Origin: Bugula neritina
Lineage: Eukaryota > Animalia > Bryozoa
Direction of reading: 5' to 3'
DNA length: 64,000 bases
NCBI GenBank assembly: GCA_964035545.1
Contig: OZ037765.1
Span: 14,270,698 to 14,334,697, forward strand
Part shown: piece by piece, positions 9,960-46,677 of the stretch
Numbering within the stretch: the stretch's first letter is position 1
How the letters are laid out: each line of letters opens with the position of its first letter
Position numbers and translations under genes: made by a program
The notes under the pieces: generated by a model
The model's database searches: none
What the model was told of the DNA's origin: nothing
What the model saw: only the letters and a program-made list of their open reading frames with translations

Positions 9960-12900
9960 TTAAGTCGGTTGTTTTGCCCTAATCTCATCATCCTGCTCTT
10001 TCAATTTCTCCCAGTGATCTCTAGCATTTCTCAACGGTATCACCATGACATCATGCAATTGAGGGAAAAGCTGTAATATTATAAGTAAAAAGTTATACAC
10101 AAACATGAGTAACTTGAAAGTTGTCCATTCTTTTTTCATGTAAGCACGAAAAGACAACTTTTACGGTATATGCCAAGTTCATGCATGACTCTAAAAGTTA
10201 GAAATATGTACCAAACACAATTTTTAAAAACCAAATTGCAAAACCTTAAAGCTTAATTATGTATGCAAGCAATTTTACATAAATGCATATAATTATTTGT
10301 ATTTAATGATTTATTTTTAAAATTTTCATCATGATTTATAAGCATTAAGCCACAGCTCCCATATAATCAAAATACTTTCATAAGTCTATACACAAAGCCA
10401 ATGTAGGGTGTATTACATTCTAGGATATGATGTGCTAAGGAATAGGTAGTAGATATCATTGAACTAGTTCTCACCAGAGCTACTTGTTCGAACATGGGTA
10501 GCAGCACGAACTTGATGAAACCAATCTGCGCGGTAGGTTTAGTCACTTTATCTCTGTCCATAAATGCAGCAACAGGTAAACCTTCCTCTTTCTCTTTATC
10601 TGACTGCAACATACACAGTAGAGTTTTATATCAGATATTGCATAACCTATCATCAATTAGTGCATTATTAAGCCTATAAATTTAAGACACCTAAAATATT
10701 GGACAAATGTAAAATATCTGAACATATAATACAGCAGCTGCAAATAAAACTTTATTCAAGAGGCAGTTAGTAAAGCAATCAATTAGCTTTGTAAAATCTC
10801 TCTAAGTGTTACACAGTTGAGAATTAAAACGATAATTTTGAAATTAATTAACAACAAAGTCATGTTACTTTGTGTTGTAAAAGTCATAAAAACAATGCAG
10901 GACTATTTAGTAAGAGCGAGCCCATACATAGATGACTAAAAAATGCATACACTGAATCAAAATATGTAATCATAACTGAATTTTTAATTTACTAAATATC
11001 TCAAAAATTATATTGAATAGTCTCAAGCTTTTCTTTCTATAAGACATTAAATTTTAGTTTAACATAACTATTTGCTATAAACCTTATGTTGTATGAAGGA
11101 TAATATAATTTTGGACTCACTATCTATCATTTCTATACATGCTATTTTTCTGGTCTACTCTAAAGATATATAAATTGTGATGTTATTACAGTCCAGTAGT
11201 TACTATAGAGAAATACTACTACTAGCACCAGCATAGTAACAGCACCTTTACAGTAATTATATTATCAACTCAACATCCCAGAAGCCTTTGTCACCAATAG
11301 CCAACACTCATACATATTAGCCATTCTTGTTTCCTCACATGTACCAGTAGATTCTATAAAACCTGTAAATGTGAACTTCAGTCAGGAGCAAAAACTTCTA
11401 TAGAGTTGCTTACAATCCCAATGAGTAACTCACTTGGTTGAAATATTCTTCAAGGAGACAGTCTAGCCATGGTTCGCTTATCTCCATCGGCCGCACCTCG
11501 TTTGATATGTCACAGCATTTAATCAAAACCATCTTAAGCTGCAACACACTAATAACATTAAAAATATTTCAAGTATTAAAAAGTTTTAAAATGTCACAAA
11601 AGACACGGATTGTGACTAACTGCTACAGCTGTAGGGGCAAATCGTATAGTAATCGAGTGTGTAGTAATGCAGTGTGTAGTAATATAGTGTGTAGTAATAC
11701 AATGTACAGTAATACAGTGTACAGTAATATAGTGTATAGTAATATAGCATATAGTAATATAATGCATAGTAATACAGTGTACAGTAATACAGTGTACATG
11801 CAGTAATATAGTGTATAGTAATATAGTGTATAGTAATATAGTGTATAGTAATATAGTGCATAGTAATATAGCGTATAGTAACATAGTGTATAGTAATACA
11901 GTGTACAGTAATACAGTGTACAGTAATATAGCGTATAGTAATACAGTGTAGAGTAATATAGTGTATAGTAATATAGTGTATAGTAATACAGTGTATAGTA
12001 ATATAGCGTATAGTAATATAGTGTATAGTAACTTAACCTGTAAATATCAGAGTAGTATGTTAATATAATTAAATTGTACACTTGAATTTTATGAAAAGAA
12101 ACAAAACAGGTAAATTTAATAGCAGACTACAATATTAACTCATAAGTTTCACTATAAAATTATCATAGAAAGTATCACAGTCAGAACTGCTAGATAGAAT
12201 ATTACAGTAAGATACTGACCACAACCATTACAATAAGATGCACTACGATTCAAGAATCATAACTACGGTAGCTATAACCTTAAATATAACTGAAGGCTTA
12301 GACCTAAAGTCAACCAATTTCTGTTGTCAGATACTAGGTGAAATTCGTTTGCAGCTAAAATAAACACTTTAGAGCTGCAGCATGACCAAAATGAATGTAA
12401 ATGAAACAACATAATTAAAGTTTTAAAAGGCGAATCATAACTAAATATTACCGCCATTAAGTCATCATCATTGCAGAAATTGAAATTTTCTCGTTTTCCT
12501 TTAAAAATGTCCATGATTTCAGAATGCCGTGCCATATCAGTTGCTAGTATCAAAGTTATAATTCCCTGTTGGTCAACAACAAAAAGTAAAATAATAAGTC
12601 ACACAGAGAAAACCATTAAGAAGTGTTCAGTATTCTGCATAATAGCTCTTGTTCCAACACTTGTTTCTTTTGTTAACTAGTGTGATGAAGATTCAAAGTT
12701 GAATAATACTGAACACTTCTTTTTGGTGTTTGGGGTACTGACAACTAGCAGATCCTACCGAGATTAAATGCTCTTCATTAGACAGTTTAAAGCCATTGTT
12801 TTTACAATTAGCTTTGAAAACCTCCAAGATTTCTCCATGCCTTGCCATATCAGTAGCTAATATCAGAGATGTCATGCCCTGTTTAGCATAGAAAGTGTTA

Positions 12901-15900
12901 AGAAAGATTATACTATATTATATTATATTATATTATTGTAATATAATATATTATAGTATACTATTGATCTTTTCTAAGTTTTTTTTATACCTGATGCTCA
13001 AAAAAATTTACTGTTTGCTATAAGTTAAAAACAGTGATGCAAAGAGTTCTTGCATTTGATAAACCCATGGCCTGAAATAACATAACTATTACATAAAAAG
13101 CCTTCCTGAAAGTTCATTTTTTGTAGACATGATTCATATTTATGAGCACCACATGTAGTTAGCAATAGAGATTTATAAAAACTCTTCCTGCAGCAAGAAG
13201 TTGGTTCATTTCTTTTTATAATAGTCAAGTTCCCATTCAAAGTGGCAATTATAATGCTTAAAAAACCCTCAAGTAGCTACTATGAGATAAGTAACGACTA
13301 GATATATTCAGTTCTTACAGCCTCATTGTCATTCTCTCACCCTGAAATGCTTGACGGCCATGTATATGCAAAGTAGTTACAAGTAAATGTGTAATAGATT
13401 AAGTATGAAGAGCTCTTACCATTCGGATTCGCTTGAATGTTTCCTGGTCACAGTTGGCAAAGATGTTAGTCTCTGGGTTGCTTAGTATTTGGAAAGCTAC
13501 GGCACAGTGGTGATTCTCCAGAGGAGAGATATCATTGTATCTAATCGCCAGCTCTGTTTTGGCATTAATCTGGTATCTAAAGAATACATACAATAGTGTA
13601 TAACTAGCTACAGGCTTATTTTTTTAAAACAAATTTTTCTATAACATAAATAGCGAATCTTTGACATTTTTTACAAATATTTTGTATTACTAGCTTGCAT
13701 ATCTTCCAATGATAAACATGCATTTCAAGGACATAAATAAACTTTCGTCAGTATCATTTCTGAGAGTAAGCAAATGTGATTCAGAGCACAGCCCTTCTTG
13801 TTAATTTATATAACACATTTTGATTTTTTAATTGTAATAGATAAATAAATTTGCCTCTTAAAATTTTTTTTAAAACAAGCTGAACAAATTTTGATATTTT
13901 ACAAATAGTTTGTGAGAAAAACTGTCTGACCAAAATTTATAAAAAACTTTATTACAATATATCATTATTGTACAATGCAATTTTTATTGCATCATGTGCT
14001 ATTTTATGGCGCTGTGTGGCATTATAAACAGTAAGGCTCTCAGTTGATCTACAATTTCGGTACCGTACTAAATTTAAGCTACATTATTGAAAATAGCAAA
14101 TTCTGATTGGTTAGAAAAGCTTTTAAACTAAAATATAGACATGTGGCTTAAACTTAAGTTGTTCTTTATAGAACCAACAAATAATTAGTAAATGAATTAT
14201 TGATTGAAGTTGAAATTGACAGTCGTATGAGCTCAAACCTGCGTGAGCCCACGCACACACACCACTAACTGATACTCCCTTGTTAAATAGTTGTTGGCTG
14301 CACTTTGATTTTTATAGTCCAGAAATATGCAAACCTTGAAACATATTCATACAAACTGCATATAGTAAACCCTATACCATATGCTTTAGTAGGTCAACAA
14401 GCATGTGTATATGTAAATACAAGATTTTTATTTCTCACGTGTTGTTATATCCAGGGTGATCAAGATCATGGCAGATACAAGCAGTAATCAGTATGCCGAT
14501 ATCCTCTTTAGCAATGTGCTCATGGAGCTTGCAGAGGTGGATCATACCATACATCATTTGGGTGACACAGAAGCAGTGTCGAAAATTGTGAAATGGGTTG
14601 TTTCTGTAGTTCTCCTGAATGCACAGCTAAAGTATACAGAAAGACAAGGTGAGCCCTCTCAGCACAAATTTCTATAATAATCAATTTTATTTGAAGTCAT
14701 AAAGCTTAAAAAGAAATTTTTAAATTCAAAATTAGCTTCTTAAAGAACAATACAGTTAACATATAGTGCACATAGAAAACAATTTAGAGTTATTGTTATT
14801 GTTTTTGTTGTTCTTGTGAGTTTGACATTCTTCAACAATATTTTTTATCCAAGTGTAGGTACACAAAATTCAAAATTTACAAACTTTGCGCAGTAAAAAA
14901 CCAGGCACATTACCATTACAGCAAATTCAACTCAACAACTTATTTATAACCATTGACTAATATTTTTTATATGCTATGTGTATTTTAGACTACATTTTGA
15001 CTCGATCTGTATGTGTTTCACCCACCAGCCATTTCTTCAGCGTGACGCCATTAATATTAAACTCTTTAACCAGACCCAGCTCATGGTACATGTGCTCCAG
15101 TAGGCTCAGCATCTACATACAGTAACACAAACTTACACTTTATGGAAGCTGCAACACCCATGTGTGGCTCAACACATGTACTTTATAATTAGAAAGGAGT
15201 TGTAAGTTTCAATTCAATAGGATAACTTTGCAGGATGATTAGGCAACGGGTTGACAATTTCCAAATAATTAAAACTTAAAATAATGAAAAAATATGTTAG
15301 CAGAATTTACCTCATTGGGTTCCCAGTGCCATATGTCAAATGTTGGCTGTTTGAGGTACTCAATGGTTTCCTTTGAGAGTGTGTACTAAAATGGATATAG
15401 ATTATGCAACATTTTAGCACAACAGAAATATTAAACCTTTTAAATTTGTAATGTGGCAAGAAACTCAACTATGCCAAATAATGTTCTTTCTCTGAGCAGA
15501 TCTTCAGTGACCGCATTGACTGGGCATGGTGGGGAGTACAAGCCAAAAATCCAACTGAGCAGCTAACAGAATACAAATACACAGGAGTTATGACCCCAAA
15601 ATTTTGAGTTGAAAAGGTGGGAGTTGTATTCTCTATATATGTATGCAACAGGGCTATCTAGTAAAAAGACGAAAGAATTGCCTGCTATGTTATGCAGCAT
15701 TGAAATAGTGTTATTTTTATCTTAAAATTATTATAAACAGCATTATAATGAAATGTGTGTGACACGCAACGGAGAGTAATCACAGAATAATATGTAAAAT
15801 ATTGGCCACTACACACTATTAATCTAAAAAGTGAAACTGAGTCTAAGTAGTATTGACCCAAATATATAAAAGTCCCAACACCAATCAATTTAGTAGAATC

Positions 15901-18900
15901 ATTGTCATAGCAATAAATACATTTAAATAATCAAGGTTTTTTAATTTTGCTTGATTTCCCATGTTTTTCCAAATTATTTAGCTACTTTTGATTGCGGACC
16001 ATCATGGTTTTTTCGTAATGGTCCACAATCAAAATTAGCTAAATAATTAGAAAAAACATGGGAAATCGAGTAAAATTAAAAAAACCCTGATTATTTAAGT
16101 GTATTTATTGATATGTTTTTAGTTTTGGGCAAAAACTCGTATTAATCAACAGCTAAATTGTGAAAAATAGCTAAAAACTGGAGATTTCCAGTGTGTACTA
16201 AATTAAGTAAAATGACCCATATATGTATATATATGACTAGCTTGAACGTGAAATTTTCGTCTGAAACAAGAATTGGTTCAACTGTCAGATAACTTGCTAT
16301 AACTTTAGGCCAACTTTGCAGTACTGTTATGCTATATAGTGCTATGGTATATAATTATGTAATATAAAACATAAAATTAAAATAATTATACATACTAAGA
16401 ATAACCATCAAGATGCATTACTTTACTTTAAGATGATGCTATACTCCAATTATCATCAGCAACACTGGAAAATGAAGCAAGAGGAGCCTCCCTTGGTAAA
16501 TAGGGAACCCTGGTCACTTTTACCCACCATGAATGTTTTATATAAACTTTATCATATTGGTATATATAATACTTGTAATGCTAGCTACTGTTATTGAAAT
16601 AGCATATACGACAATTATAATGCCTATAATTATTGTGAATTACGGCATATGTTATGCAGCTTACAACAATTTCTCTTTTTATTCAAGTGTTGTATCTTAT
16701 AATCATGCATTATTGCGTTTGTCGGTTGTTATTATAACATGTTTATTCAAGAGATTGAAATTCTTGCCATATACAATCTCATTTCACATATATACATATT
16801 CAAAGTTTTATCAGTCTAAATATTTACAGATAAAGTTATTTACTCAGCTGTCAATATACTTGCCAACATTTGAGGATAAACTTATAGCATTACTCAATGC
16901 ACTAAAATATCAATTGACTCTTGTTCAATAAAAAGTAGAATAATTTTCTGAAATAGGTATATATCTCATATTTACCCCTGTTATATAGTATATATCTCAT
17001 ATTTACCCCTGTTATATAGTATACATCTCATATTTACCTTTGATATAGTATATTTGCAAAACTTATTCCTCCGGAATCTTGCAACAGCTAACATTATTGT
17101 TACGATTTTATGGTAAAACCATAAACCTTTTATTAGCATGTTATAATAAACTCATGCAAGTTTATAGTCACCATCCCAGTGAGAATCCCTGATGGAAAGG
17201 GTTTTTTTGAAGCAGGTTAAGGACTTACTCGTATGAGGCACAGGAGCAATAATGACTGAACGCTCTTCCTAACATCACCAATGGCTTTACTGGGGATCAA
17301 ACCCATGACTCCGGGTTTACTAAGCCAATGCTTTAACCTTTAGACCATGCTGCTCCCTTTTTACTAGCATGTTATGCTGCATTATAATTTCTGAACTTTT
17401 TTCATTAGAAAAAACAACTTCTACTGAAGTCAAAATTAACAAAAAGGTGGAAAATATTACAAAATTACATTTTGTACTTATTTTTAAAAACTAACAAAAT
17501 TTAAACGTGTAAAAACTAAAAATCCATACAGTGTTCATCTATCATTTCAGTTTTAGTATTTGTGCTTTACAGTAAAACATTATTTAATGCAAAGACTACT
17601 TTAATGAAAATGGTCAAATTTAGCTTTGCCTTTTCTATGCATGTTCCATCCTAAAAAGCATGACCTAGGCCAACTGCGCAACAGTGAAGAGTTTGTTGCG
17701 ATTCATATTGAGATACTATATATATAATAGACAATTGTTCAGGTGTAGTAGACCCCCCTAGACACCATTAGATTTTGTGTACAATGTAGTGAGTGCTTAA
17801 GGTGTATACAACATTATGTGTGCTAGTGACCACACATATAGCAAAAAAATCTCATTTTTATGTGGTCTATTTTAGACAGTTCTAGACTTTAATTCACTTT
17901 CTATATAAACATCAAATAATGAACTTTGAAATTCTAAACTGCACATGATTCAACTGTAGAATATAATCTATACATGTTGGCTCAACATATGAATGTCAGG
18001 TAATTGGAAACCAAACATAATAGTTCAATAGTTTAAACTTTCAAGCCAGTTCGGTCATTAAATTGTGTGTTGCATCAGCTATGATTAGCATACAACGAAA
18101 GTAAGCAATAATTACTATTATTTTTACAATACCACAAACTCCAGAGCCGATCAAAAATTCTTTGAGCACACAACACTCCAAAAGTCTGTAGATGATATAT
18201 ATTAATATTTAATACAGCCCAAACGAGGCTTTTTCAGGGATTCTTTAACTTGACTGTAAACACAGACTTCTGTTGGATTTAAACAGCATTTTAGCATGTA
18301 GTCAACAATTGCTCAACACTTCAGACAGTGGGGACAGTGCTTGTGTGGGCATCAGCTAGTATCATCTCTATCATGCAGCTATACCTATTGTAAATATTGC
18401 TGCATGGGTACATACTATTGCATCTTATTAATTTATGGATTACCTTAGTATAGTGCGGGAGTACAGCGTGTCTTCGGTAGCTACTCTGAATCTCTGGTAT
18501 CATGGCGTGCTCTCCACTAACAAATAAATAAACAATTCTAGTCTCCATATAACAAATACATTTATATTTTATAAAAGTTGCTATGCATTAGTGGCACATA
18601 TCTTCATCCAATCAAACACTGCCAAAGTTTCAATAAATAAAAGAGTGTTTATAAAAGCTTATCAGTTTAAACAAAATTACTGGGTTACAAATGTTGTTTG
18701 ATAAAACACATTTTAAATTTTAAAAAAAGGAACTTTTCCTGAATTCAAATATTTATCTATTGACTCCACAACAGTGAAAGCATTACTAACTGATAAATAA
18801 TGGTTTGACACAAACAGCCCATTCTGTCTCAGGAATGTAACTTGCATTACTTCTACACAAAGTTACAGTAGGATAATTATTCTTGCAAAGACTGCAACCC

Positions 18901-26583: not shown

Positions 26584-46677
<20,094 letters not shown>

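What the first reader, a model, noticed from the sequence alone, without database searches (positions are those of the whole stretch)
12566..12910. Perfect 17-bp RNA stem between the duplicated PDE9 exons: a possible built-in exclusion switch
Seen: in the 193-nt intron between 13a and 13b, 12705-12721 and 12618-12634 are exact reverse complements and are not low complexity. Folding sequesters 104 nt, leaving 37 nt after the 13a donor and 52 nt before the 13b acceptor. Branch-point-like motifs (TTCTTAAT at the stem base, TGTGAC slightly further) then lie within roughly 40-60 effective nt of the donor. Known: a donor too close to a branch point blocks splicing sterically, and competing intronic pairings govern mutually exclusive exons in arthropod Dscam1 and 14-3-3. 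Weaker inference: the stem's 5' arm (AGAAGUGUUCAG) is also partly complementary to the 13a acceptor region (CUUAACACUUUCU, about 12890-12902). One docking arm could therefore mask either 3' splice region alternately.
Basis: partly seen in the sequence, partly recalled or inferred. Interest (0 to 1): 0.85.

Follow-up and report, generated by a model that had tools for sequence, protein, structure and literature searches.

The report
Intron stem between alternative PDE9 exons
In a bryozoan gene for the enzyme PDE9, a hairpin in the short intron between two alternative copies of one exon sits in the same place, with mostly unrelated sequence, in five bryozoan lineages and a clam, and probably keeps the two copies from being spliced together.

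Summary
The stem is real: a perfect, single-copy 17-bp inverted repeat in the 193-nt intron between PDE9 exons 13a and 13b. The genome is probably Bugula neritina. RNA contigs show 12>13a, 12>13b, 13a>14 and 13b>14 joints and no 13a>13b joint; the intervening intron is present unspliced in two of four runs. Both exons are in frame, so NMD cannot clear double inclusion. The duplication is old (bryozoans, annelids, bivalves, nemertean). Four more bryozoan lineages and an ark clam have a strong basal stem at the same position, mostly with unrelated sequence (swap test P=1/120; z<=-3.9 against 1 of 55 control introns below -3). In 5/5 bryozoans a branch-point-like motif follows the stem base, 19-41 folded nt from the 13a donor. 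Best reading (about 0.5): folding-imposed steric block of the 13a-13b splice. Against: no branch point is mapped, alleles tolerate a mismatch, and Owenia, oyster and one annelid lack the stem. The proposed alternative docking on the 13a acceptor failed its tests. I found no paper describing this locus; an earlier scan note covers the exon pair only.

The parts
13420..13576 (-). PDE9 exon 12 (upstream constitutive exon)
   Evidence: matches human PDE9A catalytic domain, E 8e-22; joined to 13a and to 13b in RNA contigs
12759..12878 (-). PDE9 exon 13a, 120 nt, 40 codons, phase 0-0
   Evidence: matches PDE9A residues 355-390 of chain 3qi3; 12>13a and 13a>14 joints
12566..12758 (-). intervening intron, 193 nt, GT-AG; never seen excised, present unspliced in runs X1 and X6
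12705..12721 (-). 5' arm of the 17-bp stem (intron positions 38-54)
12618..12634 (-). 3' arm of the 17-bp stem (intron positions 125-141)
12724..12727 (-). 5' strand of a 4-bp basal extension (intron 32-35), pairs with 12612-12615 across a 2x2 internal loop
   Evidence: predicted pair probability 0.97
12612..12615 (-). 3' strand of the 4-bp basal extension (intron 144-147)
12615..12620 (-). branch-point-like motif at the stem base, candidate A at 12616 (51 nt before the 13b acceptor, 39 folded nt from the 13a donor)
   Evidence: sequence; same motif +2 to +7 after the main helix in 5/5 bryozoans; not mapped experimentally
12598..12603 (-). second branch-point-like motif, candidate A at 12599 (44-56 folded nt from the donor)
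12574..12581 (-). UGUUG repeats just before the 13b acceptor (possible CELF-type sites; inference)
   Evidence: two or more copies in 4/5 bryozoans against 6% of control introns; noticed after the fact
12452..12565 (-). PDE9 exon 13b, 114 nt, 38 codons, phase 0-0; donor lacks +5 G
   Evidence: matches the same PDE9A residues 355-389; 12>13b and 13b>14 joints
11434..11538 (-). PDE9 exon 14 (downstream constitutive exon; 3' end approximate)
   Evidence: tblastn 100% to P0001 residues 304-338; loose read ends match its start

Best explanation
Exons 13a and 13b are an old pair of mutually exclusive exons coding the same helix segment of the PDE9 catalytic domain (shown). Both keep the frame, so joining them would give a stable mRNA for a protein with a duplicated core segment, and exclusion has to happen at splicing (inferred). 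In bryozoans the intron between them folds into a long basal stem that loops out its middle (predicted; supported by conservation of position). The folded intron is only 68-90 nt, and a branch-point-like A just 3' of the main helix lies 19-41 nt from the 13a donor; fallback motifs lie about 40-64 nt away. U1/U6 on the 13a donor and U2 on the 13b branch point then cannot be assembled into one spliceosome, while each site still works with a distant partner (12>13b, 13a>14). If both exons are chosen, the middle intron stays in, brings a stop codon and the RNA is a decay substrate (inferred). The stem would be a fixed exclusion device; the choice between exons would be made by other elements, such as the weak 13b donor and UG-rich motifs.
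For: All four exclusive joints seen, no 13a>13b joint, intervening intron unspliced in X1 (contig depth 19 against 7 for the next intron) and X6; retention instead of double inclusion is reported for the sterically blocked bet-2 pair in C. elegans (PMC4165533). Stem present at the same place in window, Watersipora, three further bryozoan-like species and Tegillarca, own partner best in each (P=1/120, the minimum possible, also with neutral windows). Basal-duplex z -3.9 to -5.8 against 1/55 constitutive introns of this genome and none of the flanking PDE9 introns below -3. Hand alignment of the two alignable species keeps 16/16 pairs, 5 by two-sided and 4 by one-sided change (fitted to the structure). 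Intron lengths range 176-489 nt but folded lengths 68-98 nt. TRAY motif +2..+7 after the main helix in 5/5 bryozoans, background 0.09-0.15 each. Thresholds from papers: about 50 nt donor-to-branch (PMC5740500, PMC7969005); a stem fits the yeast A complex only with at least 42 linker nt and at least 20 nt to the branch point (PMC12350175). Capitella has no basal stem but a 109-nt intron with a 69-nt AG-free zone, which would fit the linear form of the same block. The one genome whose RefSeq models include both exons (Magallana gigas) has a 1156-nt intron without a clear basal stem.
Against: No branch point is mapped; in three bryozoan species AG dinucleotides lie between the stem-base A and the acceptor, which argues for more proximal branch points at 40-53 (up to 82) folded nt, i.e. 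borderline. The folded intron of the window (77-89 nt) is at, not below, the shortest constitutive introns found here (78-100 nt). In yeast, stems of this layout promote splicing. Owenia, Magallana and annelid-like L018 keep both exons without such a stem, and Owenia has separate 13a and 13b protein models; Lineus and Pecten have only weak basal helices. A sibling haplotype and one allele of species A carry a C.C mismatch without compensation. Logan contigs drop rare joints, so absence of 13a>13b is not proof; runs X2 and X7 do not show the retained intron; lack of cover on the upstream intron is uninformative (86% identity in the sibling). The TRAY window was chosen after looking.
Confidence: 0.5

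Rival explanations
1. The stem is a ratio regulator of the FGFR2 kind: it brings protein-binding elements (e.g. the UGUUG repeats) next to the 13a donor or the 13b branch region, favouring 13a or repressing 13b, while exclusivity is enforced by something else that also works in stem-less species.
For: Same layout as the sequence-independent stem between FGFR2 IIIb and IIIc (titles in the reference lists; details from memory). UGUUG enrichment before 13b. Exon pair persists without the stem in Owenia, Magallana and L018.
Against: Does not by itself explain why folded length stays at 68-98 nt while real length varies threefold, nor the branch-like motif at the stem base in 5/5 bryozoans; one bryozoan lacks the UGUUG repeats.
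Confidence: 0.25
2. The stem masks the 13b branch point directly: the U2-pairing bases overlap the 3' arm or the basal extension, so 13b is used only when the stem is open; exclusivity follows from 13b weakness and timing.
For: In the window the candidate A sits in a 2x2 internal loop between two helices; in species A and B the motif lies in or beside the basal helix.
Against: In Watersipora and species C the motif lies outside the helix; 13b is abundant (contig depth 43-66 against 85-141 for 13a in X1, X2, X7) although the stem is predicted to form with probability near 1.
Confidence: 0.12
3. Dscam/ATE1-type competing pairing: the 5' arm docks alternately on the 3' arm and on the 13a acceptor.
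For: A 9-10 bp interrupted match exists in the window; short matches can be drawn in other species; one of eight scans (5' arm against intron 12) gave P=0.028 uncorrected.
Against: Window duplex -8.7 against -22.8 kcal/mol for the main stem, no better than shuffles; swap test P=0.28 and 0.23; ensemble probability 0.0; no other competing site significant after correction.
Confidence: 0.05
4. The stems are neutral by-products (chance, or decayed foldback elements) unrelated to splicing.
For: The genome is rich in MITE-like inverted repeats; alleles tolerate mismatches; substitutions in the stem (1 in 34 nt) are not significantly fewer than in the rest of the intron (10 in 159 nt).
Against: Single-copy sequence; six lineages with a strong stem at the same position, against 1/55 control introns; pair-preserving changes between species B and C.
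Confidence: 0.08

Closest known systems
Steric interference by a distal branch point (alpha-tropomyosin exons 2/3; OGDH exons 4a/4b, PMC7969005)
   Same: Two tandem in-frame mutually exclusive exons; candidate branch point within about 50 nt of the upstream donor; long AG-free zone in the window, Watersipora, Tegillarca and Capitella (69-91 nt).
   Different: There the distance is short in linear sequence (25-46 nt in OGDH); here it is 143 nt linear and becomes short only after folding. Branch point here is not mapped.
FGFR2 IIIb/IIIc intronic stem (Muh 2002; Baraniak 2003; seen only as references)
   Same: Sequence-independent stem in the intron between two mutually exclusive exons that approximates distant elements (location and deep conservation from my memory, not checked here).
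   Different: Described as a cell-type regulator of exon choice, looping out several hundred nt; not as a steric block. Here the stem base abuts a branch-like motif and folded length is held near the minimum intron size.
Yeast intron 'zipper stems' (PMC12350175)
   Same: [quoted passage not shown]
   Different: Zipper stems promote splicing and need at least 42 linker nt and at least 20 nt to the branch point; the bryozoan stems fall below both limits for the stem-base motif, which suggests the opposite effect.
Docking-site/selector competition (Dscam1, 14-3-3 zeta, ATE1; PMC6071210, PMC11802352)
   Same: Intronic RNA pairing at a tandem exon duplication.
   Different: Only one pairing is supported; no second, competing partner was found.
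Dscam exon 17 (Yue 2013; title only, paper not held)
   Same: Two-exon cluster where steric hindrance and RNA structure are both invoked.
   Different: From memory, the steric part there is linear proximity and the structures mask or activate splice sites; not checked here.

Membership tests
Tandem duplicated mutually exclusive exons | Two homologous exons of similar length and same phase coding the same protein segment | tested here: met
   120 and 114 nt, phase 0-0, both match PDE9A residues 355-390
Tandem duplicated mutually exclusive exons | Each exon is joined to both flanking exons in transcripts | tested here: met
   12>13a, 12>13b, 13a>14, 13b>14 in contigs of up to four studies; separate 13a and 13b proteins in Watersipora RefSeq and a bryozoan transcript set
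Tandem duplicated mutually exclusive exons | The two exons are not joined to each other | tested here: inconclusive
   No 13a>13b joint in four runs, but contigs drop rare variants; Magallana gigas RefSeq models include both
Steric-interference MXE (alpha-tropomyosin/OGDH type) | Linear donor-to-branch-point distance under about 50 nt | tested here: not met
   Candidate branch A at intron position 143 or 160; only the folded distance (39-56 nt) is short. Not a member in the strict sense; proposed to work like it.
Steric-interference MXE (alpha-tropomyosin/OGDH type) | Branch point mapped near the donor (lariat) | not testable with these tools
   No raw RNA reads available
Steric-interference MXE (alpha-tropomyosin/OGDH type) | Long AG-free zone between branch point and acceptor | tested here: inconclusive
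   69-91 nt in window, Watersipora, Tegillarca, Capitella (about the top tenth of controls); 17-32 nt in species A, B, C
Docking-site/selector competing structures | One element with two or more alternative complementary partners | tested here: not met
   Swap and shuffle tests negative for the 13a acceptor; no site in flanking introns or exons significant after correction
Docking-site/selector competing structures | Docking sequence conserved across species | tested here: not met
   Arms unalignable across most species
FGFR2-type approximating stem | Sequence-independent stem within the intron between the two exons | tested here: met
   Six lineages, mostly unrelated arm sequences
FGFR2-type approximating stem | Stem controls exon choice by approximating protein-binding elements | not testable with these tools
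   Needs mutagenesis; UGUUG repeats are only suggestive
NMD-enforced or U2/U12-incompatible MXE | Double inclusion shifts the frame, or splice sites of different spliceosome types | tested here: not met
   Both exons multiples of 3; donors GT with U2-type context and AG acceptors
MITE or dispersed foldback repeat | Many genomic copies with terminal inverted repeats | tested here: not met
   Single copy, unlike two other inverted repeats in the window
Known structured RNA (Rfam) | Match to a covariance model | tested here: not met
   No match at E<=1

The most novel reading that the evidence does not exclude
Mutual exclusion can be enforced by a single, non-competing intronic stem that folds an otherwise spliceable intron below the spliceosome's donor-to-branch-point minimum: an 'anti-zipper' stem whose geometry, not sequence, is conserved across bryozoans and at least one bivalve, and which is interchangeable in evolution with a plain short intron (Capitella). 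Such cases would be missed by surveys that measure only linear distance or look for competing pairings.
Probability: 0.45. Interest if true: 0.8.

Novelty: new variant of a known kind. Interest (0 to 1): 0.64.

Why it matters
Surveys of mutually exclusive exons explain only a minority by linear steric distance, spliceosome type or NMD (human: 9%, 0.8% and part of the frame-shifting set; PMC5740500) and score steric hindrance on unfolded sequence. If a plain stem can create the steric limit, many unexplained two-exon clusters become testable by folding the intervening intron. The locus offers a compact natural series: strong stem (five bryozoans, ark clam), short intron (Capitella), no stem with annotated double inclusion (Pacific oyster). 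It also shows two alternative versions of a PDE9 catalytic-core segment kept across four lophotrochozoan phyla, for which my literature search found no description.

Tried and rejected
Competing pairing with the 13a acceptor: rejected by swap, shuffle and ensemble tests. Docking sites in flanking introns or exons: none after correction for eight tests. Repeat origin: rejected. Rfam: nothing. MAFFT alignment of five bryozoan introns misregisters the arms, so RNAalifold covariation was not usable; only a hand alignment of species B and C is reported. Two myosin heavy-chain exon pairs in the same genome have no basal stem, so it is not a genome-wide rule. The primary papers on Dscam exon 17 and FGFR2 were not held; a second id tried from memory was not held either. 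Reads were laid on 12100-14700 only, to stay clear of the tandem repeat, so exon 14 joints are read from loose ends and double skipping could not be seen.
Full report
OBSERVATION. The two 17-mers at 12705-12721 and 12618-12634 are exact reverse complements inside a 193-nt GT-AG intron on the minus strand, with 37 nt to the 13a donor and 52 nt to the 13b acceptor. Shuffled introns give at most an 11-bp helix, the intron folds at z -2.8, and the stem has pair probabilities of 0.87-1.0 with flanking exons included. A 4-bp extension is predicted below a 2x2 internal loop. The intron is single-copy and the 17-mer occurs exactly only as the two arms; two other inverted repeats in the window are dispersed MITE-like families. 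Rfam has no match.

ORGANISM AND GENE. The assembly has 216.0 Mb, the size published for Bugula neritina (PMC11480708), and the closest named homologue of a near-identical relative's protein is from the bryozoan Watersipora; I therefore take it for B. neritina (inference). Exon 12 matches human PDE9A, and 13a (120 nt) and 13b (114 nt) both match the same residues, 355-390 of chain 3qi3. Both are phase 0-0, so joining them keeps the frame.

TRANSCRIPTS. Contigs of four runs from four studies (RNA by guess; a sibling haplotype about 6-9% diverged in introns) show exon 12 joined to 13a and to 13b, and both joined to exon 14; no 13a>13b joint appears. The intervening intron is present unspliced in X1 (depth 19, against 7 for the next intron) and X6, but not in X2 or X7. 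Read through, it reaches a stop after 21 codons. Contigs show presence, not absence or level, and the lack of cover on intron 12 means little because the sibling is only 86% identical there.

AGE OF THE EXON PAIR. Both exons are present in Watersipora, Owenia, Capitella, Tegillarca, Magallana, Lineus and Pecten, and in metagenome contigs of three bryozoan-like species (A: L009-L011, B: L012-L013, C: L022) and one annelid-like species (L018). The assignment of A-C to bryozoans is inferred from exon similarity. A tree of 25 exon peptides puts all 13a copies on one side of a branch and all 13b on the other (support 86/83, only 39 columns), which fits one old duplication without proving it. The Lottia copy examined, vertebrate-like loci and several clitellate-like loci show one exon. 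My search found no paper on mutually exclusive PDE9 exons.

CONSERVATION OF THE STEM. The intron is 193 (window), 187 (Watersipora), 410 (A), 183 (B), 176 (C) and 489 nt (Tegillarca). Each has a basal stem of 16-26 bp, starting 14-37 nt after the donor and ending 45-74 nt before the acceptor, so the folded length is 68-98 nt. The arms are unrelated in sequence except between B and C, where a hand alignment keeps 16 of 16 pairs, five through changes on both sides and four on one side (the alignment was fitted to the structure). In a swap test each 5' segment pairs best with its own 3' segment (P=1/120 for five bryozoans, also with neutral windows; flanking introns P=0.075 and 0.80). The basal-duplex z-score is -3.9 to -5.8 in these six lineages, while 1 of 55 inferred constitutive introns of this genome and none of the flanking PDE9 introns fall below -3. 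Limits: Owenia, Magallana and L018 have no such stem; Lineus has an 8-bp closing helix (probability 0.93, folded length about 72 nt) and Pecten a weak one, neither significant; Capitella has a 109-nt intron with a 69-nt AG-free zone and no basal stem. The sibling haplotype has one C.C mismatch in the stem (10+6 bp remain) and one allele of A likewise, so perfection is not what is conserved.

BRANCH-POINT GEOMETRY. Its folded distance from the 13a donor is 39, 19, 38, 41 and 27 nt; the next candidates lie mostly at 40-64 nt, and Tegillarca's first at 56. Published limits are about 50 nt from donor to branch point (PMC5740500, PMC7969005), and for a stem inside the yeast A complex at least 42 linker nt and 20 nt to the branch point (PMC12350175). 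Against distal use, AGs lie between the stem-base A and the acceptor in A, B and C; hairpins are predicted over them in A and B but not clearly in C. The shortest constitutive introns found here are 78-100 nt, so folded length alone is borderline, not prohibitive.

THE DOCKING IDEA. The 5' arm against the 13a acceptor gives -8.7 kcal/mol, equal to shuffles, against -22.8 for the main stem; its ensemble probability is 0.0; the swap test gives P=0.28. Scans of both arms against both exons and both flanking introns gave one nominal P=0.028 in eight tests, with small energy residuals. Not supported.

MECHANISM. Shown: exon identity, in-frame duplication, four exclusive joints, single-copy stem, positional conservation. 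Predicted: folding. Inferred: that the stem acts on splicing (about 0.9), and that it does so by making the 13a donor and 13b branch point too close for one spliceosome (about 0.5). Retention of the middle intron rather than joining is what is reported for a sterically blocked pair in C. elegans (PMC4165533). Magallana gigas, with a long stem-less intron, has many RefSeq models with both exons; this is weak support, since gene predictors often chain such exons (Tegillarca and Capitella models do so too). Rivals are an FGFR2-like ratio regulator (0.25), direct masking of the branch point (0.12), neutrality (0.08) and competing docking (0.05). Side features that may set exon choice: the 13b donor lacks +5 G in 12 of 12 dual-exon species, against +5 G in 26 of 27 loci with one exon copy seen (many closely related) and 47 of 68 control introns; UGUUG repeats precede 13b in 4 of 5 bryozoans.

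COMPARISON AND NOVELTY. Reviews list short introns, U2/U12 incompatibility, NMD and competing structures as the mechanisms of mutual exclusion (PMC6071210). This case fails the strict tests for each: linear distance is long, sites are U2-type, the frame is kept, and no competing partner exists. It resembles the FGFR2 stem in layout and yeast zipper stems in geometry, with the proposed effect reversed. My searches found no description of folding-imposed steric exclusion, but the library lacks many primary papers, including those on Dscam exon 17 and FGFR2. I rate it a new variant of a known kind, interest 0.64. The spliced model was searched exon by exon; the joined step was left out.

Noticed in passing
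window 15930-16090: About 160-nt inverted-repeat element in an upstream PDE9 intron; at least 40 dispersed copies at 84-88% identity: MITE-like.
   Followed up: partly
window 34700-35170: About 470-nt foldback element with 52-bp and 74-bp perfect arms; many dispersed copies: MITE-like.
   Followed up: partly
window 11640-12030: 15-nt tandem repeat of about 25 copies in the intron after 13b; RNA contigs of three runs run from 13b into this intron at depth 7-9, in line with a weak 13b donor.
   Followed up: partly
L098:1506-1986 and L098:3200-3547 (G000:C1 near 10.72 Mb): Two tandem duplicated exon pairs in a myosin heavy chain gene of the same genome (intervening introns about 265 and 150 nt); no basal stem.
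   Followed up: partly
13b donors of all dual-exon loci (window 12446-12454 and orthologues): All 24 duplicated exons end in an NCG codon followed by GTA; the 13b donor lacks +5 G in 12/12 species, and the 13a donor has +5 G only in the five bryozoans.
   Followed up: partly
L109:76162-76835 and L108:25230-25998: In Pecten and Lineus one element near the 13b acceptor can pair either with the intron's 5' end or with an internal element; possible competing structures, not significant in my test.
   Followed up: no
   Followed up: no
G000 small contigs C80, C101, C126, C127, C154, C204, C213, C231, C247: Intron-poor CCT, myosin and PDE matches with many in-frame TAA/TAG stops: looks like ciliate contamination of the assembly.
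   Followed up: no
L007 (Magallana gigas) proteins P0173, P0288-P0295, P0299: Ten RefSeq isoforms seen here include both 13a and 13b, while models of the close relative C. angulata include one: worth checking in raw reads.
   Followed up: partly
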